This document shows, one piece after another, positions 48,686 through 63,619 of a stretch of DNA of 64,000 nucleotides (its first letter is position 1; each line of letters opens with the position of its first letter). The notes under the pieces are model-generated. The model saw nothing but the letters and a program-made list of their open reading frames with translations, was not told the DNA's origin and searched no databases. The stretch lies in NCBI RefSeq assembly GCF_000142905.1, contig NW_013657619.1, positions 131,173 through 195,172 of the forward strand, written 5' to 3'. Source of the stretch: Thecamonas trahens ATCC 50062 (taxonomy: Eukaryota > Protista > Apusomonadida). Position numbers and translations under genes: made by a program.

Positions 48686-49740
48686 TTAGCACACCACATA
48701 CGCATACATGCGGGTCATCTCGGCTTCGTCATCGTCGTCGTCACCGTCGCTGCCGTTAATAACCCCGACCGGCCGAACCCACTCAGCGAGCCGCTCCGGG
48801 CTCCATCCCAGCTCGCCAAGGACCAGCTCGAGCGATGGGTGCGAGAGGACAAGCGTGCCAGGCTTGAGCGCGCTCGACACCGTCTCCCACACCTCTGGCT
48901 GGTCGTCGCGCGGGACAAAGAACTGAAAGACGTTGTTGAAGACCGCAATCGACGCGCTGCTTAGCTCAGCCAGCCCAGCCTCGGACTCGGCCCGCGCCTC
49001 CACAAACCGCGCTGCGTCGGCGAGCCCATACCGCGCCGCCGTCCGGCCAGCCAGCCCGGCAAAGTACGCATTGGCCTCGACACCGATGCCCTCGATGCCG
49101 CGATGGCTCAACCCGCGGACGGCGCCCAGAACAACGGCGCCGAACCGCGAACCAACGTCGACGAGGTGAGCGCCAGAGTCCGGAAGGCCGAGCGCCGCCC
49201 ACTGCCCGTCGAGCCAGGCCACGATGGAGGTGATCTCGGCCGGCGAGAGGCTGTGGGAGATGATGTGAACCGCGCGGACGCCGTCTGCCCTGCGGCAGTG
49301 AGCGCAGACGTACTCGTAGTACGCCGCCTGCGAGGCGTCAAACAGATCGTCGGCCGAGTCGACGCCCACCCCGCCGCCGCCGGCGGAACAACCGCCAAGG
49401 CATCGGCCGGATCCGGGAAGAGCAGCGCATCGATGTGGACCGAGTTTCCGGCATCGCACTCGCCAAACAGCCCCATGCTTTGATGAAGGACCGTCTCGCC
49501 GGGTGCCAGTCCGCGCGCAGCCTCTCCGCCGTCCGCCGCCAGCTCCTCCCGAACGTATCCGCCAATGACCTCCAGCCACGCCTCGAGCGCTCCGTCGCCC
49601 ACCGCTCCCACCGCTCCCACCGCCAAAGGCTCTTCCGTCTCGGCCTCCCGTCGCCGGGTGTCTTCGGCATACACCGCCTCGAGGAACTCGTACCACTCGT
49701 CGGCAGACACGAGCGGAATCTGGCTTGTAAGCGAGGTCAT
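48686..49740 (-). CDS. Uncharacterised class I SAM-dependent methyltransferase, apparent 1-nt deletion near 49369-49372
   Basis: C-terminal frame has CxxC, ISHS, LVDVGSRFGAV, GIGVEAN and NNVFQFF; the N-terminal frame (49108..49740) has VHIDALLF. One extra G in a GGGG run joins them. Confidence 0.75.
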
Positions 49741-53329: not shown

Positions 53330-54652
53330 TCATCGCCAGCGCGGCTTGGCGACATCGGCCGCAGACGCGGAGACGGCTGACGGTAGATTGCCGGCTGGGC
53401 GCGGCGCTGACCGCCGGAGCTGGACTCGCCGCTCGGCAAGGGAGAGCGGGCGTGAGCGGCCAGTGGCAATGGGCGCGGGTAGGACCCCGGGTGCACTCGC
53501 AGAATCGGCAAAGATCAACGAGCTGTCAAGGGTGGGCGGGTGCTGGGTGCCGGCGCGTGGGTTAAAGTACTTGGAGACCTTGCCGATATCACCAATCTCG
53601 TACTCACCAGGGCCTGGTGTGACGCCTGCACGGGCAGCGGCGGCGGCGGCAGCCGGCGACGAGTAGCGGACCCGGGTGTCGTGGAGGAAGTGCGGCTTGA
53701 GCGACGAGCCGGGAACAGGCTTGGCCACAGGAGCAGCAAGGGCGTGGCTGCCGACAAGCCGGACAGCGTGAGCACGGGCATCACGAGCAGCCGCAGTGTC
53801 CTCGGGATACGGGTCGTACGAGCCCGGGCCGGGCGGCGGCGGCGACGCCGACTGCAACGCGCCAGCAGTTGACAACGAAGCAGCGGCTGAGGGCGCAGCA
53901 GTCGCGGGCGAGCGGGTCGTGGCCGAGGCAAAGGCGGCCGATGGCAACGGCTTGCGCGGAGCCTGATGCGGAGCCTCTGGCTTGTACGCGCCTGGGCCCG
54001 GGACCTCGAACCCAGACGGAGTGAGCCGCTGGCCCACCGGGCGGGAAAAGGCTGCGCTTGTCTTCTTCTTGTACCGCGGCTCGGGAAGGTCCACCGAGTA
54101 CGCGCCCGGCCCTGGCTGCGGTGATCTGCGAGCGCGCAGCTCGTCGGTCCGCAAGACGGCCAGGCGTGGAGCAAAAGCGGCCGAGGCCGGGCTCCCGCGC
54201 TTTGCGGCCAGCCTCCGAGCCGCGCCATCCACATCGTAGGCACCGGGCCCGGGGGCAAGAGTCCGGCCGGAAAAGTCGCGGCCAAAGCGACGAGTCCGCG
54301 AGACAAAGCCGCCGGTGTAGCCCTTTGCGCCGATGGAAGGCGAAGCCGACTCGAGCGAGGCGTGGGCCGAGTAGGCCAAGGTCGGCGGGCCATCTGTGGC
54401 CAGTTCAGCAAAGCGCAACGAGCGCGAGTTGAACCCATCCGCCTCCCGTGCTCCATCCAGCAGCAGTGTCTCATACTTGGAAGGAATCGATGCCGCAGCC
54501 CCATCACGTGTTCGATCGTACCCGGTCCGGGTCGGGCCTGTGGGCGGGGAGGAGGGCAGTTAGTTGGGTGGGTGAGGTGTGAGGGGGGGGAAGGGGGAGG
54601 GGGGGTGGGGAGGCTTACCTTTGAGAAGTCCCCTGTTGTGGACACCAGCCAT
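53330..54652 (-). CDS. Sperm-tail PG-rich (SHIPPO) repeat protein, STPG1-like; exons 54652-54619 and 54537-53330
   Basis: Five PGPG(A/S/E)Y repeats; SIPSKYET...GFNSRSLRF resembles the STPG1 N-terminus; phase-1 GTAAGC...CAG intron 54618-54538. The gene may extend into the gap. Confidence 0.75.
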
Positions 54653-55594
54653 GCCCGTGCGGGGGGGANNNNNNNNNNNNNNNNNNNNNNNNNNNNNNNN
54701 NNNNNNNNNNNNNNNNNNNNNNNNNNNNNNNNNNNNNNNNNNNNNNNNNNNNNNNNNNNNNNNNNNNNNNNNNNNNNNNNNNNNNNNNNNNNNNNNNNNN
54801 NNNNNNNNNNNNNNNNNNNNNNNNNNNNNNNNNNNNNNNNNNNNNNNNNNNNNNNNNNNNNNNNNNNNNNNNNNNNNNNNNNNNNNNNNNNNNNNNNNNN
54901 NNNNNNNNNNNNNNNNNNNNNNNNNNNNNNNNNNNNNNNNNNNNNNNNNNNNNNNNNNNNNNNNNNNNNNNNNNNNNNNNNNNNNNNNNNNNNNNNNNNN
55001 NNNNNNNNNNNNNNNNNNNNNNNNNNNNNNNNNNNNNNNNNNNNNNNNNNNNNNNNNNNNNNNNNNNNNNNNNNNNNNNNNNNNNNNNNNNNNNNNNNNN
55101 NNNNNNNNNNNNNNNNNNNNNNNNNNNNNNNNNNNNNNNNNNNNNNNNNNNNNNNNNNNNNNNNNNNNNNNNNNNNNNNNNNNNNNNNNNNNNNNNNNNN
55201 NNNNNNNNNNNNNNNNNNNNNNNNNNNNNNNNNNNNNNNNNNNNNNNNNNNNNNNNNNNNNNNNNNNNNNNNNNNNNNNNNNNNNNNNNNNNNNNNNNNN
55301 NNNNNNNNNNNNNNNNNNNNNNNNNNNNNNNNNNNNNNNNNNNNNNNNNNNNNNNNNNNNNNNNNNNNNNNNNNNNNNNNNNNNNNNNNNNNNNNNNNNN
55401 NNNNNNNNNNNNNNNNNNNNNNNNNNNNNNNNNNNNNNNNNNNNNNNNNNNNNNNNNNNNNNNNNNNNNNNNNNNNNNNNNNNNNNNNNNNNNNNNNNNN
55501 NNNNNNTGGGGGAAAAAAAATGGCCCCCAAAGGGGGGGGTGACATCGTAGCTGGGTATGGGCAGGGGAGGAGGAGAGGGGAGAGTGATGATTGT

Positions 55595-55855
55595 GCATCG
55601 CATCGATTGTGTCGATGGTATCGAGGGATTGTATCGATCGCCTCGATTAGTTGTGGTTGATAAATTGTATCGAGGGATTGTGTCGATCGCCTCGATTAAT
55701 CGCCTCGATCAATCGTATCGATCAATCGTTTCGATTAATTGTGTCGATCGCCTCGATTAAGCGTATCGATCAATCGTATCGATCAATCGTATCGATTAAT
55801 CGTACCGATCAATCGCCTCGATCAATCGTATCGATCAATCGTATCAATCGCATCG
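55595..55855. repeat. ATCGAT/ATTAAT/CAATCG low-complexity array in a divergent intergenic region
   Basis: Repeated gatcaatcgtatc and cgcctcgattaa units. Confidence 0.85.
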
Positions 55856-56070: not shown

Positions 56071-56839
56071 ATGGCTCGATACGAGGCGACGTACGGCGAC
56101 GGGTCGTTCCAGGTCTCCGGCAGCTTGCATCGGATGCTCTCGCAGGCCACGCCCCTGTACGAGTACCTCACAGGCCGCAAGGCGCCTGCGGTGGTGGTAC
56201 GTTCCCCAAACCCTGTCGGCTTGACCATGCCATGGCCTCGCTGTGGCTGGGAGTGAGTCCGTTGGCAGCCGTTTGGCAACCAACGGTCTTTTGGCCGACG
56301 CACGCGTGGCGAGCTCGACGCAGCCGAGCAGCACCACTGGCCGGGTGTGTGGCTGTTGGTGGATTCGGCAGGAGTGGCTCACAGAGAGTGTTGCCGTGGA
56401 GATGGTGTAGGTGCCGGCAGAGATGGATCCGCGCGATGTGGTGGCCTCGAGGCGGTCACACGGCCTCTTTGCCCACTCGGTCCGCATGCCCTCGCGCCAC
56501 GGCGAGACCGAGGGTCGCTATCCGTGGACCCTCCCGCGCGAGGTCGAGGAGGAGTTGGAGCGATCGGCATCGGGGCTGCTGGAGATAGCCGACGATAATG
56601 GCGAGTATGACGAGGATAACGACGAGTGTGGATCGGGGTATGATGCAGCTGACGGTGCCGATGAGACCCGTCAGGCCGGCGCAGATGCCGATGCAAGCGC
56701 AGACAAGGCTGAGAGCGAGTTTGCCAACACTCGCAAGCCCGCATGGGCTGCACGCTCGCAGTTCCGCCCAGCCTCGCAGATCACCTTTACCAACCGCGGC
56801 CCGTACGGCAACACCTACGACATTTCTATGTACATGTAG
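56071..56839 (+). CDS. Hypothetical acidic protein, 2 exons (56071-56196, 56411-56839)
   Basis: accATGg start; GTACGT donor at 56197 and TAG acceptor at 56410 join the two ORFs in phase 0. Confidence 0.6.
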
Positions 56840-56986
56840 CCGATCAACACCCGCCGCCCCGCCGCACACAGATACCATCGTCAGGCGCAGGTATTGCCAC
56901 CGTTGCAGATGGCAACAGCTGCTGAAAGAGCTGATAAATACGCCAAGACCGAGCATTGAGCCCGTTCTCGCTTGCTTTGCCAAATC

Positions 56987-58065
56987 TCAAAGAAGTGTCA
57001 TGAGCAGCTCGAGCTCGTTGAACGTGCCGAGGATGATGGCAATGTGCCAAAGCTGGTGCGAGGCACCCCAGATGTCAAACAAGCCCGTGGGGATCCACCG
57101 CTCCGGCACCTTGTAGAGGAATGGCACCATACCGATGGCGTACCACTTTTGCACGTCCCACATGGCCTGGGCCGCTTGCGCAGCAACCGGCGCGTCGACC
57201 GCGTACAGCCGCCAAATAAGGGCCCACGAGAGCGCGGTAAGGAGCACCATGCCGACGTAGATGCGGTACTTGCGGTGCGGCTGGAGCACAAGCATGCTGA
57301 TAGTCCACACCAAGACTACCGTAACCACGCAGCCAAACGCCGCCACAAACATCAGATTCTCGGCCGAGACCAGGGTGGCAGCTGGAACAAGATCGCGCCC
57401 ACGATCCGCAGCGCCGAGCCAGGCCGGTGGCACAAAGAGACCGACGAGGGCAACAAGCTCCAGGCCGCCGATGTGGAAGAGCACGCCGATGTAGTCCCAC
57501 TGGCGGAAACGGAAGCACACGTCCGCTGAGTGGCACATAACCGCATGATACGCCGCCGAGAGGAGGAACTGCGAGGCAAAGGCAAAGATAAAGACGCCGA
57601 CCAGCGCGGCGTCCAGCCACGACAACGGGCCAACGTCACGGATGTGCGCCGCCAGTCGCAGTGCCAGCATCACTGCCACCACCACCGTCCCACCAGCATG
57701 CGTCCACACATTCATCGTCTGATTGTGGAGGTACCATACCGATCGCATGCACTGCGCCATGCTCGCGCACCCGAGCCGGTAGCCCGAGATCACAAACGGA
57801 TTAACCCTCACCCACAGCGGCGACTCGTCGTACGAGCCCAGCTCCACGCCGTCGAACAGCACCGTCCGTCCCGCCGAGTCCTTGTCTCCGCCAGCATCTG
57901 CAACTTCTCCCACAGACCCCCCCCCGTCCCCGATCCCGCCGCCGCTCCCCGCCGCCGATGCCGCACACCCGTCGCTCCGCTCGCCACGCCACAGCCTGTC
58001 GGACCCATCGCCCCCGCTCCGCCGGCCGTCGCCATGCCGCTCGCCGACTCGTCACCGGCCACCAT
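56987..58065 (-). CDS. PAQR/adiponectin-receptor-like (HlyIII family) 7TM protein; the N-terminus probably needs one extra base in the C9 run at 57917-57925
   Basis: NPFVISGYR, LHNQTMNVWTH, SAAYH..MCHS, DYIGV, KVPERWIP.GLFDIWGASHQLWHI; the nearest suitable ATGs (MVAGDES...) are in the adjacent frame. Confidence 0.88.
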
Positions 58066-59005
58066 GTCGGACAAGAAGGAGGTTGCCCCACGTCCTCGCC
58101 GCTCTTGTTCGGTGACAGAGTGAGGTGCCGGCATTAGACGGTGGAGCTGTAGACGCGTGCTTCCATGGCTGCGCCACGGCCAGACAATCGTGCGTCAGTC
58201 GCTGATCAGACCGATCGATTTGAGCCAACAACAGCTGCGTTGCGCCACTACATAGCCATCGATGCTGAGAGCCTCATCTCGTGGTGATGCCAAAGCGGGT
58301 GCACTTGATATGCAGAGGCTGTGGAAGAGGCTGTGTAATGCAAACTGATCGGATGTGATGGCGCCTGGGACGATGGAGAGGTTAGGGCGATGACAAGGTG
58401 AGGCGACGTGGCTAAGGGGATGAGGCAGCTGGCGAGCAGTGGCCGGGTGATGGAGACAAGGACAGCGAGCAATGTGACCTGGCCACGATCTCTGCATCAA
58501 CCCGACTGTTGCTCTTCCCTCCATCACAGCTTCATCGCGCCGTGGTAGGCGTTGTCCCCTGCGACGGCATCGCCTGGCTGAATGGGCGTGCGTCAGGCAG
58601 AGTGAGTCACCCCATGTCGGCCGTGCCAGCAGAGCTGTGTCCGCAGCGCCGTGTGTCAGCAGCAGGCAGCGAGGCAGAGGGGGAGAGAGCGAGGCCACAG
58701 TCTGGGCAACGCCTGACTTGTGCCTGGTGACCAGCATGTCTGGCCGTGTCGTGGGAATGTTCTGCATGCCGGCGCCGTGTGGTCTCGACGCGCTCTCCGT
58801 CGCGCCATGGACGGTGGTCGACTCGGTCGATGTGGAGCCGCGAGGGCCGACTGGTCCCCGCTTTGGGGCGGTCTTTGCGGTGGCTGGGCCTGGCGAGGCT
58901 GATGTGGCTGGGCCTGGGGCTAGTGCCGCCGATGTGGCTGGAGCTGACGAGGCTGGCGCGATTCTGCCAGCAGCGGCATGCCCTCTCTCCCGGCAGGGCA
59001 ACAAG

Positions 59006-62000
59006 ATGATGGAGACGACGATGGAAGGTACGACGATGGAAGGCGTCGTCTGGCTGCGCGGCCGGAAGAGAGTGTGGGCGAGGCGATGGGCGGTGCTGCA
59101 GGCAGATGGCGTGCTGGTTGTTGGCCCGCCACGCGCCGAGTCGAGCGAGGAGTCGTGCCTGCATGCAGCAGCGGTCAACGCTGGATGTCCACGTTCGGAC
59201 GATGATGACGAGCATGTGCGACTAGATTTGGCGGGGACAAGGGCAACGGTGTCGGGAAGGCATATCCGTCGCGGTGTCGGGCTTAAGATTGAGGGTGATT
59301 TGCCATTTGTGCAGGGCGCGACTGGAATGAGCGCGTCCATTGCGCACCTGGTTGTGCCTGACGACGAGTCGCGACAGGCATGGATTGCAGCGCTTAATGC
59401 TGCGGCAGCCGTGGCCGCCACTCGTTCCTCTGCGCCGACTCGCCTCCGCATTGTGCTGACCTTTACTGGGCCGCCGCCGGAGCGCCACGAGCTTGAGCCT
59501 GTGATGGTGGTCGACGCGCCCGGTGCCGCCCGCCAAGGCGTCGAGCTCGCCTGGCAGTGGGTCGCCGCCAACTACCTCGCCACCGCCCGGGCTGTCGGCC
59601 TCACGCTCTCGCCCGCCGAGGTTCGCCGCATTGCACTGGTCTTTTTTGGCAATCTCGCGCTGGCGTCGCAGCATCCAGACTTTGCGCTGCATGTATTGGC
59701 CAGCCCGACACCGGCACCAGCTGACGACGAAAGACCGGGACCAGCCCCAAGCCTTGCTGCAGCGCTTGCGTCCATCAAGCCGAGCGCGCCGCCAGCGCTG
59801 GCGCCGTCACCGCCAGCCGAGGCACTCGACGCATCGCAGTACTTGTTTCAGGCCATTTCGCTGGTCGACACGCTCACAAGCGCAAGTCCGAGCCCGAGCC
59901 CTGTGCCGAGTGCAGACGATGGTGATGATGGCGAGGCGGGATCGAGCTCGGGCGAGGCTGGAACCAGCGGGCTTGCCATTCTCAACACCTCTTTTGTCGC
60001 CCGCGGCATCTTTCTTGTCTCGTCATTTGTGGCGCGGCTGGTCTCCGGCCCGTCGCTCAAGCTCGGGGTGCTGCAGATGATGGCGCGCGCGACGCGCGAG
60101 GCCGGCATTTCGCTGCAGCCGATGCAGAGCCGCGAGCCGCGCGGCCCCAAGACCCGATGGCTTGTCGGCAACATCCCGGACATTCTCCCCGCCAAGGGCG
60201 CGGTCCATGCCGCGGCGCTCCTCACCTATGAGTACGGCAAGCTGACCAAGCTCGCGCTAGGCAAGGAGAAGTTGTATGTGGTTGCCGACGCCAATTATGT
60301 GCACCGGATCATGGCATCAGCCGAAAAGCGGTTTCCCAAGCAGGAGGTCATGGCACGGTCGCTGTTCATGGCCGACGGCGAGACGTGGGCGTCGTCGCGG
60401 CGGACGCTCCTACCGGCTTTTGGCACGCGGTCGATGAAGCACTTTGTGCCGGCGTTCCACGAGGCGACACTCTGCCTTGCGGCGTCGATGCGAGCGCTTG
60501 CGGTGGAGAGCCCCGGAACGGCGTTCAATTGCTTCGATGCGTTCAAGGAGCTCACGTTCCAGGTCATCTGTCGGTGCGGGTTCGACTACGACGCGTCGCG
60601 GGCCAACCCACATGCGGAGGCCTTTACCTCGGCGTTTGAGTTCATCATCCACCACCAGGTCACGCGCTCGTTCCAGTTCGGCTTTCTCAAGATCCTGCCG
60701 ACCTCGTCGAACCGGCGGTTTGCGGCAGCCAAGGCTTCGATTGAGACCGTCGTCGCCGACATCATGGCCCAGCGACTGGCGGAGCGTCCGGCCGGCGTTG
60801 CTCGCGGCGAGCTGCCGCCGTCGGCGTCGGAGCACGCCGACTTTCTGGCGTTTATGATGGATAACGCCGACCCAGAGACGGGTGACTTTATCTCGCACGA
60901 CATCATGCAGGAGCAGGTCATGGTCTTTCTTGCCGCCGGTCATGTCACCACCACGCTCCTCACCTCGTGGGCGCTCTTCTGTATCGCGCAGCATCCCGAG
61001 GTCGAAGCCAAGATCCTGGCCGAGCTGGCCGGGGTGCTTGGGCCGGACCCGGCGGCGCTGCCGTCGTTTGCGCAAATTGGCGAGATGCACTACCTGCTCA
61101 TGGTGCTGAAGGAGACGCTGCGGTTGTACCCGGCGGCTCAGTCGGTCATCCGCTACCACCCGGAGCCGTTTGTGGTTGGTGGCTACCGAGTTGCTGGCGG
61201 GAGCCACTCGATGACCGTTCCGTGGGTCATCCACCGCGACCCGGAGCTGTGGAGCCAGCCTGAGGCGTTCATCCCGGAGCGATTTGCGCCCGAGCGCGAG
61301 ACTCGCCGGCACCCGTTTGCGTGGATGCCGTTTGGCGGCGGCGACCGTGTGTGCATTGGCTCGCGCTTTGCGCTTCTCGAGGTCCGTGCCGTCGTTGCCG
61401 TTCTCCTCCGCAACTTTCACTTTGAGGTTCCCCCGGGTTTTGAAGTTGCAGCGTCGCGAAATCCGGTGGAGCCCGACGGCGGGCTGCTCCTGGTTCCGTC
61501 GCTCCGCGATTCGGCGGCAGCCGCGAGCCAGGGTGCGGCTCTGTACGACTCGCTTGCCAGTTTTGCTACCCACGATCCGGATGCGCTTGCCGATCACATT
61601 CCCAAGCACCTCGAGGTGGTGGCTAACGTCTGCGGTATGTCTGGTGAACAGCTGGCGGCGGCAGCGGCGGCGGCGCAGGAGAGCGTTGCAGCGGCAGCGG
61701 CGAGCCCAGAGCTAAGCGATGAGGTGATCCGGCTGGCGCCGAGCCTCAATGGTGTCGAGGGTGGCCTCGAACTGGTAATTGGTTACGGGTCGAACATGGG
61801 CACCTCGCGCGGCTTTGCGCAGACGATTGAGGCCGACGCAAGGCGACGGTACGGCAGCGCGCTGAGCAGGGTAGTGATCTCGCCGCTCGATGAGGTGCTG
61901 AGCTCTGGCGCGCTGGTGAGCAGCGAGCCCGACGCGACGAGCGTGCTGGTTGTTGTCACGTCGTCGTACAACGGTGAGCCGCCGGACAACGCGCGCGACT

Positions 62001-63619
62001 TTGTGGCGTGGCTCAGCGAGGCCAGTCCCGAGTCTGCCGGCCTCGGCTCGTGGTACACGGCAGTGTTTGGCTGCGGCAACACCCAGTGGGGCCATCGGTT
62101 CCAGGCTGTGCCAAAGAAGGTTGCCCACGAGCTGGAGCGGTTAGGAGTGAGCGCGATCTGCGAGCGTGGGGCTGGCGATGACGACACCTCGCTGGACATG
62201 GACTTTGAGGCGTGGTACACACTTTTTGTGCCGGCGCTCGACATGGCGTACGGCGTGGAGGCGGTTCCTTTGGTGTCCGCCGACGGTGCCGATGACATCG
62301 AGTCTGGCGACGAGCTTCCAGCGCTGGTTCTCGAGGCGGCTGGGCCACACGCCGAGGCGCTCTCGCTCGAGGCGCTGCACTCGTCCGACGGCGGGCGTCG
62401 GATGCGAGTGGTGGTCAACGACGAACTGCTCTCACCCGAGTATGTGCGCAAGACCGGGTTTTCGACCCGGCACATCGAAGTGATGATGAACAGCGGCGAG
62501 AATGACAAGTACGCGCCGGGCGACCACATCGGCGTGTTTCCGGCGAATCCCGAAGCTGCGGTGGTGCGGTTTGCGGTCCTCGCCGGGCTCTACGATGAGC
62601 TCGACGAGTTGGTGGTGGTGGGCGACGGTGGCTCGTCGTGGGACGTCCTGCAGCCGGGGACGGCGACTACAGCGAGGTTTGTGCTCACCCACGTGGTGGA
62701 TGTGTGTGGCGCGCCGCCGCGGATGCTGCTTCGCAAGCTCGCGCAGTTCTGCTCGGTAGCGAGCGAGCGGGCGACGCTGGAGATGCTCGGCTCGTCAACG
62801 GCCGAAGGCATGGCGGCGTACGATGAGCTTGTCCTCGGACGGCGGCTGACGGTGAGCGATGTACTGCGGCAGTTTCCAAGCGTGGCGGTGGCTGGCGCCA
62901 GCGTCTGGTTCTGCGGCCTGCTGCCCAAGCTCAAGCCGCGGCTGTACTCGATCTCGTCGGCACCGCAGGGCGGTCTTAACGAGGTTGTCTCACTCACAGT
63001 CGGGGTGGTCCGCGAGACAGCACCTGCCTTTGGCGGGTTGGCGTCCAACTATCTGGCGGAGCTTGCACCGGGGACCGAGCTGTGGGCCTTTACGCGTTCG
63101 TGCGATCCGCACTTTCGGGTTCCGGCTGCCGGAGAAGGCGGGTCGACAGACGGGGTGGCGATGGCGCTGGTTGGACCGGGCACCGGCTTTGCGCCGTTCC
63201 GCGGTTTCCTGCACGAAGTTGCGCGGCGGCCAGGGCCGCACACGCAGCACATGGTGTTCATCGGATGTCGCCAGGCCGGCGGTGACGAGCTGTACGCTGA
63301 CGAGCTGGACGGCTTTGAGGCTGCGGGCGTTGTGGGCACCGTTTCGCGGGCATACTCGCGCGAGCAGACGACAGTCTCGGGCTCGCGGATGTATGTGCAG
63401 GACCGAATGGCAGAAGCCGCGCGTCCGCTGTGGGAGAAGATTCTGTCTCCAGTAGCCGGCGGGCGTGTCTTTGTCTGCGGCGATGGGCGGCGGATGGCTA
63501 AGGACGTCCGGCGGGTTGTTGCCCGCATTGCCGAGGACGAGGGCGGTGTCACCGATGGCGTCGCATGGCTCGCCGACATGCAGGCCAGCGGGCGATATGT
63601 CGAGGATGTGTGGGGATAG
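59006..63619 (+). CDS. Self-sufficient cytochrome P450-NADPH:P450 reductase fusion (CYP102/CYP505-like) with N-terminal PH-like domain
   Basis: P450: AAGHVTT, ETLR, PERF, FGGGDRVCIG. FMN domain: YGSNMGTS, TSSYNGEPPDNA, VFGCGN.QW. FAD/NADPH domain: RLYSISS, GPGTGFAPFRGF, YVQD, VCGDG, RYVEDVWG. PH: EGVVWLRGRKRVWARRWAVL...ESRQAWIAALN. Confidence 0.92.
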   Translation: MMETTMEGTTMEGVVWLRGRKRVWARRWAVLQADGVLVVGPPRAESSEESCLHAAAVNAGCPRSDDDDEHVRLDLAGTRATVSGRHIRRGVGLKIEGDLPFVQGATGMSASIAHLVVPDDESRQAWIAALNAAAAVAATRSSAPTRLRIVLTFTGPPPERHELEPVMVVDAPGAARQGVELAWQWVAANYLATARAVGLTLSPAEVRRIALVFFGNLALASQHPDFALHVLASPTPAPADDERPGPAPSLAAALASIKPSAPPALAPSPPAEALDASQYLFQAISLVDTLTSASPSPSPVPSADDGDDGEAGSSSGEAGTSGLAILNTSFVARGIFLVSSFVARLVSGPSLKLGVLQMMARATREAGISLQPMQSREPRGPKTRWLVGNIPDILPAKGAVHAAALLTYEYGKLTKLALGKEKLYVVADANYVHRIMASAEKRFPKQEVMARSLFMADGETWASSRRTLLPAFGTRSMKHFVPAFHEATLCLAASMRALAVESPGTAFNCFDAFKELTFQVICRCGFDYDASRANPHAEAFTSAFEFIIHHQVTRSFQFGFLKILPTSSNRRFAAAKASIETVVADIMAQRLAERPAGVARGELPPSASEHADFLAFMMDNADPETGDFISHDIMQEQVMVFLAAGHVTTTLLTSWALFCIAQHPEVEAKILAELAGVLGPDPAALPSFAQIGEMHYLLMVLKETLRLYPAAQSVIRYHPEPFVVGGYRVAGGSHSMTVPWVIHRDPELWSQPEAFIPERFAPERETRRHPFAWMPFGGGDRVCIGSRFALLEVRAVVAVLLRNFHFEVPPGFEVAASRNPVEPDGGLLLVPSLRDSAAAASQGAALYDSLASFATHDPDALADHIPKHLEVVANVCGMSGEQLAAAAAAAQESVAAAAASPELSDEVIRLAPSLNGVEGGLELVIGYGSNMGTSRGFAQTIEADARRRYGSALSRVVISPLDEVLSSGALVSSEPDATSVLVVVTSSYNGEPPDNARDFVAWLSEASPESAGLGSWYTAVFGCGNTQWGHRFQAVPKKVAHELERLGVSAICERGAGDDDTSLDMDFEAWYTLFVPALDMAYGVEAVPLVSADGADDIESGDELPALVLEAAGPHAEALSLEALHSSDGGRRMRVVVNDELLSPEYVRKTGFSTRHIEVMMNSGENDKYAPGDHIGVFPANPEAAVVRFAVLAGLYDELDELVVVGDGGSSWDVLQPGTATTARFVLTHVVDVCGAPPRMLLRKLAQFCSVASERATLEMLGSSTAEGMAAYDELVLGRRLTVSDVLRQFPSVAVAGASVWFCGLLPKLKPRLYSISSAPQGGLNEVVSLTVGVVRETAPAFGGLASNYLAELAPGTELWAFTRSCDPHFRVPAAGEGGSTDGVAMALVGPGTGFAPFRGFLHEVARRPGPHTQHMVFIGCRQAGGDELYADELDGFEAAGVVGTVSRAYSREQTTVSGSRMYVQDRMAEAARPLWEKILSPVAGGRVFVCGDGRRMAKDVRRVVARIAEDEGGVTDGVAWLADMQASGRYVEDVWG

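What the first reader, a model, noticed from the sequence alone, without database searches (positions are those of the whole stretch)
59006..63619. PH domain fused to a self-sufficient P450-reductase: a possible membrane-recruited, signal-responsive oxygenase
Seen: one uninterrupted ORF carries a PH-like module (~59036-59410; basic beta1-beta2 region WLRGRKRVWARRWAVL and terminal helix SRQAWIAALN). It continues into a ~90-aa unassigned globular segment, a Pro/Ser linker, a full P450 and a full FMN/FAD/NADPH reductase. Known: CYP102A1 (BM3) and fungal CYP505 are P450-CPR fusion fatty-acid hydroxylases without targeting domains, and PH domains with basic beta1-beta2 loops often bind phosphoinositides. 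Inference: this may be a one-polypeptide lipid oxygenase recruited to specific membranes. I do not recognise this architecture as described.
Basis: partly seen in the sequence, partly recalled or inferred. Interest (0 to 1): 0.82.

Follow-up and report, generated by a model that had tools for sequence, protein, structure and literature searches.

The report
PH-like domain on P450-reductase fusion
A gene of the flagellate Thecamonas trahens encodes a self-contained oxygenase (P450 plus its own reductase) that carries an extra, very divergent PH-like domain at its front end, seen in only one other sequence so far; the public gene model hides this domain by cutting part of it out as an intron.

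Summary
Window 58637-63619 (+) is one stop-free frame. From ATG 59006 it encodes 1537 aa with strong Pfam hits to p450, Flavodoxin_1, FAD_binding_1 and NAD_binding_1. The window is Thecamonas trahens ATCC 50062, and the protein is already in NCBI as 'NADPH-cytochrome P450 reductase'.

The catalytic 1172 aa align colinearly (32% identity, E 3e-145) with a fungal P450-reductase fusion. So the core is a known kind, at an identity too low for CYP102 or CYP505 family membership.

The first about 140 aa are PH-like. They score below Pfam's cut-off (18-19 bits against 25.1) but clearly above controls:
- 16.8 bits against a profile of 30 Thecamonas PH domains, where 200 shuffles reached at most 3.5.
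- hhalign probability 89%, where shuffles reached at most 14%.
- Protein-language-model neighbours are PH clusters.

The only relative of the N-terminal region is a marine metagenome contig. It keeps the PH C-terminal half, the middle module and the P450-reductase in one frame.

The NCBI model removes 59028-59105 as an intron, and that stretch encodes PH strands beta1-beta2. Six verified Thecamonas introns look different, so I think this intron call is probably wrong, but only RNA data can settle it. Membrane recruitment and signal response remain inference.

Verdict: a new variant of a known kind, of moderate interest.

The parts
59006..63619 (+). Coding sequence as read here (ATG 59006 to stop 63617-63619), 1537 aa. 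The open frame reaches up to 58637, and the NCBI model starts at ATG 58736.
59030..59428 (+). PH-like domain, aa 9-141: seven predicted strands plus a C-terminal helix carrying the invariant Trp (W126).
   Evidence: Pfam PH 18-19 bits, below the cut-off. Own-genome PH profile 16.8 bits against at most 3.5 in shuffles. hhalign 89%. ESM feature neighbours are PH clusters. MSA-guided AF2 model with pLDDT 75, whose best PDB matches are AKT PH domains.
59028..59105 (+). 78-nt in-frame GT..AG stretch that the NCBI model removes as an intron. It encodes PH beta1-beta2 (GTTMEGVVWLRGRKRVWARRWAVLQA).
   Evidence: It adds about 10.6 bits of PH signal, and 0 of 4000 shuffles reach the real score. It is unlike six verified introns. 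Its codon usage is not coding-like.
59015..59044 (+). 15-nt tandem duplication (the TTMEG peptide twice). Its junction creates the GTACG donor-like site.
   Evidence: read directly
59438..59710 (+). Conserved middle module of unknown fold, aa ~145-235. Its core is LAWQ..NYL..AVGLTL..VFFGNLALA..HPDFALHVL.
   Evidence: Strongly conserved in L001. No hit in Pfam, PDB, the 1.84-billion-protein search or the ESM Atlas.
59711..59965 (+). Pro/Ser/Ala/acidic low-complexity linker, aa ~236-320.
   Evidence: It is variable between the two homologues but in frame in both.
59966..60091 (+). Conserved hydrophobic or amphipathic segment, aa ~321-362, just upstream of the P450 Pro-rich hinge (PRGPKTRWLVGN).
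   Evidence: Kyte-Doolittle 1.56 over 19 residues. It has the highest helical hydrophobic moment of the first 400 aa, 0.50. Conserved in L001.
60137..61450 (+). Cytochrome P450 domain, aa 378-815. I-helix AGHVTT at 60935-60952. Heme-ligand Cys783 at 61352-61354.
61451..61777 (+). Unusually long P450-to-FMN linker (about 110 aa) with a roughly 40-aa block conserved in L001. The fungal homologue lacks most of it.
61778..62215 (+). FMN-binding flavodoxin domain, aa 925-1070.
62402..63052 (+). FAD-binding domain, aa 1133-1349.
63167..63511 (+). NADPH-binding domain, aa 1388-1502.
56990..57913 (-). Divergently oriented neighbour: a HlyIII/PAQR family membrane protein. This is context only; no functional link is shown.
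   Evidence: PF03006, E 1.9e-26

Best explanation
This is a single Thecamonas trahens gene for a self-sufficient (class VIII type) cytochrome P450 fused to an FMN/FAD/NADPH diflavin reductase. The catalytic part is homologous over its whole length to fungal CYP505-like and bacterial CYP102-like fusions.

It carries a lineage-restricted N-terminal extension of about 370 aa. In order, the extension holds a very divergent PH-like domain at the extreme N-terminus, a conserved module of about 90 aa with unknown fold, a low-complexity linker, and a conserved amphipathic helix where microsomal P450s carry their membrane anchor.

Shown here: the frame, the domains, the catalytic motifs, conservation of the whole order in a second organism, and a PH signal above chance.

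Inferred, step 1: the 78-nt stretch that the public model removes as an intron is really coding, so the mature protein has a complete PH domain.

Inferred, step 2: the enzyme takes electrons from NADPH through FAD and FMN to the heme and oxygenates a fatty-acyl or other lipid substrate, by analogy with CYP102 and CYP505.

Inferred, step 3: the PH-like domain and the amphipathic helix place or regulate the enzyme at a membrane surface.
For: - Frame and domains: one stop-free frame with four strong catalytic Pfam domains.
- Homology of the core: colinear 32% identity over 1172 aa with the Sorochytrium P450-reductase fusion, E 3e-145, with the same C-terminal end. PDB hits to CYP102-type fusions and to CPR.
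- PH signal from sequence: Pfam 18-19 bits spanning profile positions 2-103. Own-genome PH profile 16.8 bits against at most 3.5 in 200 shuffles. hhalign 89% over q7-137 and t2-102, against at most 14% for shuffles. The helix Trp W126 is conserved.
- PH signal from other methods: ESM feature neighbours are PH clusters at 0.90. The MSA-guided AF2 model has PH topology, pLDDT 75, and matches AKT PH domains.
- Second organism: the frame of contig L001 runs from its cut 5' end through the PH C-terminal half, the middle module, the linker, the P450 and the reductase.
- Annotated intron, PH content: the 78 nt carry about 10.6 bits of PH signal, and 0 of 4000 shuffles reach the real score.
- Annotated intron, comparison with real introns: six verified introns are 83-370 nt with GTACGT/C or GTATGT donors. 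Five of the six have a CTNAC-like motif and a C/T-rich 3' part. The candidate is GTACGA, G-rich and has none of these.
- Donor site frequency: GTACG occurs 113 times in the window.
Against: - The PH match is below Pfam's curated cut-off, and no single PH protein reaches significance in PDB or in the large search.
- An unbiased AF2 run with a two-sequence alignment failed, pLDDT 31.6. The good model was guided by a PH alignment.
- The public model does splice out beta1-beta2. The donor GTACG fits the reported Thecamonas preference for C at intron position +4 (bioRxiv 10.1101/2022.06.08.495308). A position about 20 nt after the ATG is typical for intron-poor genomes.
- The 26 codons have non-coding-like usage, -0.24 bits per codon.
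- L001 is cut before beta1-beta4, so conservation of that part is untested.
- The canonical beta1 lysine is a leucine. Most PH domains do not bind phosphoinositides specifically (established knowledge).
- The substrate is unknown. The I-helix acid is replaced by valine (AGHVTT), which in CYP102A1 is a proton-delivery residue.
Confidence: 0.6

Rival explanations
1. The NCBI model is right. The 78 nt are a constitutively spliced intron, the mature protein lacks PH strands beta1-beta2, and the N-terminal region is a decayed remnant or a non-PH extension without lipid-binding function.
For: - GT..AG borders with donor GTACG, matching the reported +4 C preference (bioRxiv 10.1101/2022.06.08.495308).
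- A 5'-proximal position like the verified actin and tubulin introns.
- Non-coding-like codon usage of the 26 codons.
Against: - The stretch is in frame, stop-free and encodes the PH beta1-beta2 signature far beyond shuffles.
- The remaining PH half is conserved in L001, which is hard to explain for a fragment that cannot fold.
- The candidate lacks the +6 T/C, the branch-like motif and the C/T-rich 3' part seen in verified introns.
- The donor arises from a 15-nt tandem duplication.
Confidence: 0.22
2. The stretch is a facultative, in-frame retained intron. Two isoforms exist, one with a complete PH domain and one without, so that splicing switches targeting or regulation.
For: The length is a multiple of three with no stop. 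Both coding features and splice-site features are present.
Against: There are no transcript data. Thecamonas is intron-poor with strong signals, and the candidate fits these only at the donor.
Confidence: 0.08
3. The N-terminal similarity to PH domains is chance or convergent. The region adopts another fold or is disordered.
For: It is below the Pfam cut-off. There is no significant single-sequence hit. The unbiased AF2 run failed. ESM feature scores of 0.90 occur for 4-10% of shuffled proteins.
Against: - Three largely independent profile or embedding methods agree over the full domain length.
- The invariant Trp and the WxRRWxVL strand sit in register.
- Even the part outside the annotated intron scores above all shuffles (hhalign score 26.4 against at most 21.5).
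Confidence: 0.1
4. These are two separate genes, a small PH protein and a P450-reductase, that share one open frame only by chance in a GC-rich genome.
For: Stop-free stretches are common at 65% GC. Many spurious long ORFs overlap this locus.
Against: The same frame continuity through a variable linker is kept in L001 at about 51% identity. Codon usage is coding-like throughout 59441-60145. There is no internal gap in conservation at the amphipathic segment.
Confidence: 0.04

Closest known systems
Fungal class VIII P450-CPR fusions (CYP505 type, e.g. P450foxy/CYP505A1). The closest sequence found is the Sorochytrium milnesiophthora protein P0007.
   Same: Same order P450-FMN-FAD-NADPH in one chain. 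Colinear alignment over 1172 aa at 32% identity, E 3e-145, with an identical C-terminal GRYVEDVWG. Eukaryotic. The class is reported to hydroxylate fatty acids subterminally (PMC4950769).
   Different: Identity is below the 40% used for CYP family membership. It has an N-terminal extension of about 370 aa with a PH-like domain and an unknown module. The P450-FMN linker is about 90 aa longer. The I-helix reads AGHVTT where P0007 has AGHETT.
CYP102A1 (P450 BM3) and actinobacterial CYP102-like fusions
   Same: Self-sufficient P450-diflavin reductase. PDB heme-domain hits around E 1e-39, and whole-fusion structures 9wuk and 9wuc hit the reductase part at E 1e-71. About 30-32% identity to Streptomyces fusions.
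   Different: Those are bacterial, soluble and have no N-terminal extension. CYP4B1 and CYP3A score as well as or better than CYP102 against this heme domain.
PH-domain-targeted lipid enzymes and lipid-transfer proteins (AKT, ORP8, CERT, PLEKHA7 PH domains)
   Same: An N-terminal PH-type module precedes a catalytic or lipid-handling body. The guided model superposes on AKT PH at TM 0.72-0.77 by target length. The beta1-beta2 loop is basic and the key beta2 arginine is kept.
   Different: Sequence identity is 14-22%. The canonical beta1 lysine is replaced by leucine. There are long inserts in the beta3-beta4 and beta6-beta7 loops. The partner is a P450 oxygenase, a pairing I did not find described.

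Membership tests
Cytochrome P450 (PF00067) | Profile match over the whole domain above the curated cut-off | tested here: met
   269.7 bits against a cut-off of 22.8, aa 378-815
Cytochrome P450 (PF00067) | Heme-thiolate loop FxxGxRxCxG, ExxR and PERF motifs | tested here: met
   FGGGDRVCIG, ETLR and PERF are read and conserved in L001
Cytochrome P450 (PF00067) | I-helix acid-alcohol pair (A/G)Gx(D/E)T(T/S) | tested here: not met
   It reads AGHVTT. The threonines are kept and the acid is replaced by Val in both homologues. P0007 has AGHETT.
Class VIII self-sufficient P450-CPR fusion | P450, FMN, FAD and NADPH domains colinear in one polypeptide | tested here: met
CYP102 / CYP505 families (P450 nomenclature) | More than 40% amino-acid identity to family members | tested here: not met
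   27-35% identity to the nearest fused relatives. Authenticated CYP505A1 and CYP102A1 sequences were not compared residue by residue.
CYP102 / CYP505 families (P450 nomenclature) | NADPH-dependent subterminal fatty-acid hydroxylation | not testable with these tools
   Needs an enzyme assay
PH domain (PF00169) | Profile score above the curated cut-off of 25.1 bits | tested here: not met
   13.7-18.9 bits
PH domain (PF00169) | Full-length profile similarity above chance | tested here: met
   16.8 bits against at most 3.5 in 200 shuffles. hhalign 89%, E 2e-6, over 99 columns, against at most 14% for shuffles.
PH domain (PF00169) | Seven-stranded beta-sandwich capped by a C-terminal helix with the invariant Trp | tested here: inconclusive
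   W126 aligns with the invariant Trp. The AF2 model guided by PH domains shows the topology at pLDDT 75. AF2 without that guidance failed.
PH domain (PF00169) | Phosphoinositide-binding basic motif (beta1 Lys, beta2 Arg) and lipid binding | tested here: inconclusive
   The beta2 Arg (R27) is kept. The beta1 Lys aligns with L17, with R18, R20, K21 and R22 nearby. Binding itself is not testable here.

The most novel reading that the evidence does not exclude
The PH-like domain is intact in the mature protein and binds a specific phosphoinositide or another membrane cue. A self-sufficient NADPH-driven lipid oxygenase is then recruited to, or released from autoinhibition at, a defined membrane. 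Signal-dependent lipid oxygenation would be achieved in one polypeptide, an arrangement not described for any P450.
Probability: 0.15. Interest if true: 0.75.

Novelty: new variant of a known kind. Interest (0 to 1): 0.48.

Why it matters
Self-sufficient P450-reductase fusions are workhorses of biocatalysis and are usually treated as free-standing enzymes. A natural version with a built-in PH-type module would be the first case of such an enzyme wired to a membrane or signalling cue. It would be directly testable by expressing the domain and the full protein.

It also comes from apusomonads, a sparsely studied sister lineage of animals and fungi. The whole-length homology to fungal fusions bears on how old this fusion is in eukaryotes.

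On the practical side, the public gene model appears to delete part of a domain. Domain databases therefore miss the architecture, which is a small example of how annotation hides novelty.

Tried and rejected
- Word-index protein search with the N-terminal 380 aa as a stand-alone query: no hit.
- The same region within the full-length protein: only P0001 and P0002.
- Full HMMER search of 1.84 billion representatives: only P0002.
- Two scans of JGI metagenome contigs, one with the N-terminal alignment A2 and one with the P450 alignment A4: no relatives.
- Own genome: single copy.
- PDB sequence search with the N-terminal 380 aa: nothing significant. The best PH hit was RAPH1 at E 0.6.
- AF2 on aa 1-250 with a two-sequence alignment: pLDDT 31.6, unusable.
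- ESM Atlas on the middle module: no usable hit.
- Literature searches for Thecamonas P450s and for PH-P450 fusions: nothing relevant.
- Antisense ORF 58198-59571 and ORF 56598-57113: no Pfam family. I treat them as GC-rich artefacts.
- A classical transmembrane anchor at aa 323-345: rejected in favour of an amphipathic helix. The hydropathy is marginal, arginines are spaced every 11 residues, and the hydrophobic moment is 0.50.
- Codon usage could not decide the start codon between 58736 and 59006.
- The joined (spliced) model was scored only inside local scripts from files in /data. It was not sent to any database tool. NCBI's own spliced product was used by its id, P0001.
Full report
**What is there.** The window is GC-rich (about 65%) and holds many long stop-free frames. 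The frame 58637-63619 (+) is uninterrupted.

A word search identified it as 100% identical to an NCBI protein of Thecamonas trahens ATCC 50062 named 'NADPH-cytochrome P450 reductase' (P0001, 1601 aa). The window is therefore nuclear DNA of an apusomonad. In the assembly it is contig C61:131173-195172.

From ATG 59006 the product is 1537 aa. Pfam gives these hits:
- p450: aa 378-815, E 5.8e-80.
- Flavodoxin_1: aa 925-1070.
- FAD_binding_1: aa 1133-1349.
- NAD_binding_1: aa 1388-1502.

The heme-thiolate loop, ExxR, PERF, the FAD motif RLYSISS, the NADPH motif GPGTGFAPFRGF and the C-terminal DVWG are all present. The catalytic machinery looks intact.

**The catalytic core is a known kind.** The 1172 C-terminal residues align colinearly with a P450-reductase fusion of the fungus Sorochytrium milnesiophthora (P0007). 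Identity is 32%, E is 3e-145, and the alignment runs to an identical C-terminal end.

Other near relatives are fusions from Calcarisporiella and Streptomyces at about 30-32%. Against solved structures, the heme domain hits CYP4B1 (1e-47), CYP3A (1e-40) and CYP102A1 (1e-39) about equally. The reductase part hits whole CYP102-type fusions (1e-71) and microsomal CPR (3e-69).

This is a class VIII type self-sufficient P450. Its identity to the nearest fusions is below the 40% family threshold, so it is not a CYP102 or CYP505 member by nomenclature.

Two deviations are conserved in both homologues:
- The I-helix reads AGHVTT, where P0007 has AGHETT.
- The P450-FMN linker is about 110 aa long with a conserved block of about 40 aa that the fungal protein lacks.

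**The N-terminal extension.** About 370 aa precede the P450 hinge. They have one relative only. Neither the word search, nor the full HMMER pass over 1.84 billion representatives, nor two metagenome scans, nor the organism's own genome gave anything except P0002.

P0002 is a 1403-aa call on a 4713-bp Tara Oceans contig, L001. Reading that contig shows its frame is open to the very 5' end. Upstream of the called start it encodes a stretch that aligns with the second half of the Thecamonas PH-like region: GLGIRIE against GVGLKIE, and VVPSDERPSWILALN against VVPDDESRQAWIAALN. After that come the strongly conserved middle module, a variable Pro/Ser linker, the conserved hydrophobic segment, the P450 and the reductase.

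So the order PH-half, module, linker, P450, reductase is kept in one frame in two organisms that are about 51% identical in this region. That argues against two separate genes. L001 is cut before strands beta1-beta4, so that part has no comparative support.

**Is it a PH domain?**
- Pfam's PH model matches aa 10-133 to profile positions 2-103. The score is only 13.7-18.9 bits against a cut-off of 25.1.
- I built a profile from 30 of the at least 150 PH domains of the same genome. The N-terminus scores 16.8 bits, against at most 3.5 for 200 shuffles.
- hhalign against that profile gives 89% probability and E 2e-6 over 99 columns, from beta1 to the C-terminal helix. Controls gave 0.9% for the reversed sequence and at most 14% for 100 shuffles.
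- In the MAFFT alignment, W126 falls on the one nearly invariant PH residue. VWARRWAVL falls on the WKRRWFVL strand.
- Protein-language-model neighbours are PH clusters at 0.90. On its own this is only a lead.
- AF2 with the two-sequence alignment failed at pLDDT 31.6.
- AF2 with the alignment of own-genome PH domains gave pLDDT 75 and pTM 0.69. The model has seven strands and a C-terminal helix, and its best PDB matches are AKT PH domains. Because the alignment was made of PH domains, this shows compatibility and is not independent proof.

I conclude that the region is a divergent PH-like domain, with a probability of about 0.8-0.85. It has long inserts in the beta3-beta4 and beta6-beta7 loops.

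The key beta2 arginine (R27) is kept. The canonical beta1 lysine aligns with L17, inside a very basic loop (R18, R20, K21, R22). Lipid specificity cannot be read from this.

**The annotated intron.** P0001 differs from the open frame in two ways. It starts at ATG 58736, and it lacks 26 residues, which correspond to an in-frame GT..AG stretch at 59028-59105. Those residues are exactly PH beta1-beta2.

Points in favour of a real intron:
- The donor is G|GTACG, and T. trahens is reported to be intron-poor with a preference for C at intron position +4 (bioRxiv 10.1101/2022.06.08.495308).
- Verified introns here also sit near the 5' ends of genes.
- The 26 codons score -0.24 bits per codon. The rest of the PH region scores +0.25 and the P450 +0.61.

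Points against:
- The stretch is a multiple of three and has no stop.
- It raises the PH profile score from 6.2 to 16.8 bits and the hhalign probability from 52% to 89%. None of 2000 nucleotide shuffles (maximum 9.6 bits) or 2000 residue shuffles (maximum 16.3 bits) reaches the real score.
- GTACG is common: 113 copies in the window, several of them inside this same ORF and one inside actin exon 2.
- The donor arises at the junction of a 15-nt tandem duplication.
- Six introns that I verified in actin, tubulin and Arp genes look different. They have GTACGT (four), GTACGC or GTATGT donors and are 83-370 nt long. Five of the six have a CTNAC-like motif and a C/T-rich 3' part. The candidate is GTACGA, 78 nt, G-rich, and has no such motif.
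- The PH half downstream is conserved in L001, which would make little sense for a fragment that cannot fold.

I put about 0.65-0.7 on the stretch being coding in the main transcript, about 0.2 on constitutive splicing and about 0.1 on both isoforms existing. Only transcript data can decide.

**Other parts.** The middle module (aa ~145-235) is the best conserved piece of the extension and matches nothing.

The segment aa 321-362 lies just before the Pro-rich hinge, where microsomal P450s have their anchor. Its hydropathy is marginal for a transmembrane helix, 1.56. It has the largest helical hydrophobic moment of the first 400 residues, with arginines 11 residues apart. I read it as an in-plane amphipathic membrane helix. 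This is inference.

**Mechanism proposed.** NADPH reduces FAD, then FMN, then the heme, within one chain. The P450 oxygenates a lipid-like substrate, by homology to CYP102 and CYP505, whose class is reported to hydroxylate fatty acids subterminally (PMC4950769). The amphipathic helix and the PH-like domain hold or regulate the enzyme at a membrane.

The catalytic part of this proposal is well supported by homology. The substrate and the targeting are inferred.

**Neighbourhood.** The divergent upstream gene at 56990-57913 (-) is a HlyIII/PAQR protein. I confirmed only the family assignment, and head-to-head position in a eukaryote is weak evidence.

**Novelty and verdict.** The protein is public, and its core is a known enzyme class. 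What is new is the N-terminal architecture, which the public model and domain databases do not show and which I found in only two sequences. It is a new variant of a known kind. Interest is moderate, limited by the sub-threshold PH score, the unresolved intron and the absence of any functional data.

Noticed in passing
window 60935-60952: The P450 I-helix reads AGHVTT. The conserved acidic residue of the acid-alcohol pair is Val in both Thecamonas and the metagenome homologue, while the nearest fungal fusion has AGHETT. This may affect proton delivery or coupling.
   Followed up: partly
window 61451-61777: The linker between the P450 and FMN domains is about 110 aa, much longer than in the fungal fusion. 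It holds a block of about 40 aa (LYDSLASFATHDPDAL...) conserved in L001, of unknown role.
   Followed up: partly
window 56990-57913 (-): A HlyIII/PAQR family membrane protein lies head-to-head with the P450 fusion gene, about 0.8-1.1 kb between the starts.
   Followed up: partly
window 48972-49060 (-): ARAGORN calls an 89-nt tRNA-His with anticodon ATG instead of the usual GTG. It could hold an intron or be a miscall.
   Followed up: no
window ~54600-55700 and 55700-55810: A run of N (an assembly gap or withheld stretch; GC reads 0 at 55000-55499) is flanked by a short-unit satellite of the ATCGATACGATTG type.
   Followed up: no
window 36733 and 36896 (-): Two copies of an element beginning GGGTGAGTACGCATCC lie about 160 nt apart. 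Another first-stage note flagged this place as a possible structured RNA.
   Followed up: no
L033, L034, L035, L036, L037 (own genome: actin, tubulin, Arp genes): Six verified Thecamonas introns have donors GTACGT (four), GTACGC and GTATGT, and lengths of 83-370 nt. Several are placed about 30 codons after the start. Five of the six have CTNAC-like motifs (CTAAC, CTCAC) and C/T- or CA-rich 3' parts. This is a useful yardstick for checking gene models in this genome.
   Followed up: yes
own genome: At least 150 PH domains are detectable in six-frame translation of this 28.7-Mb genome, nearly all in single uninterrupted frames.
   Followed up: no
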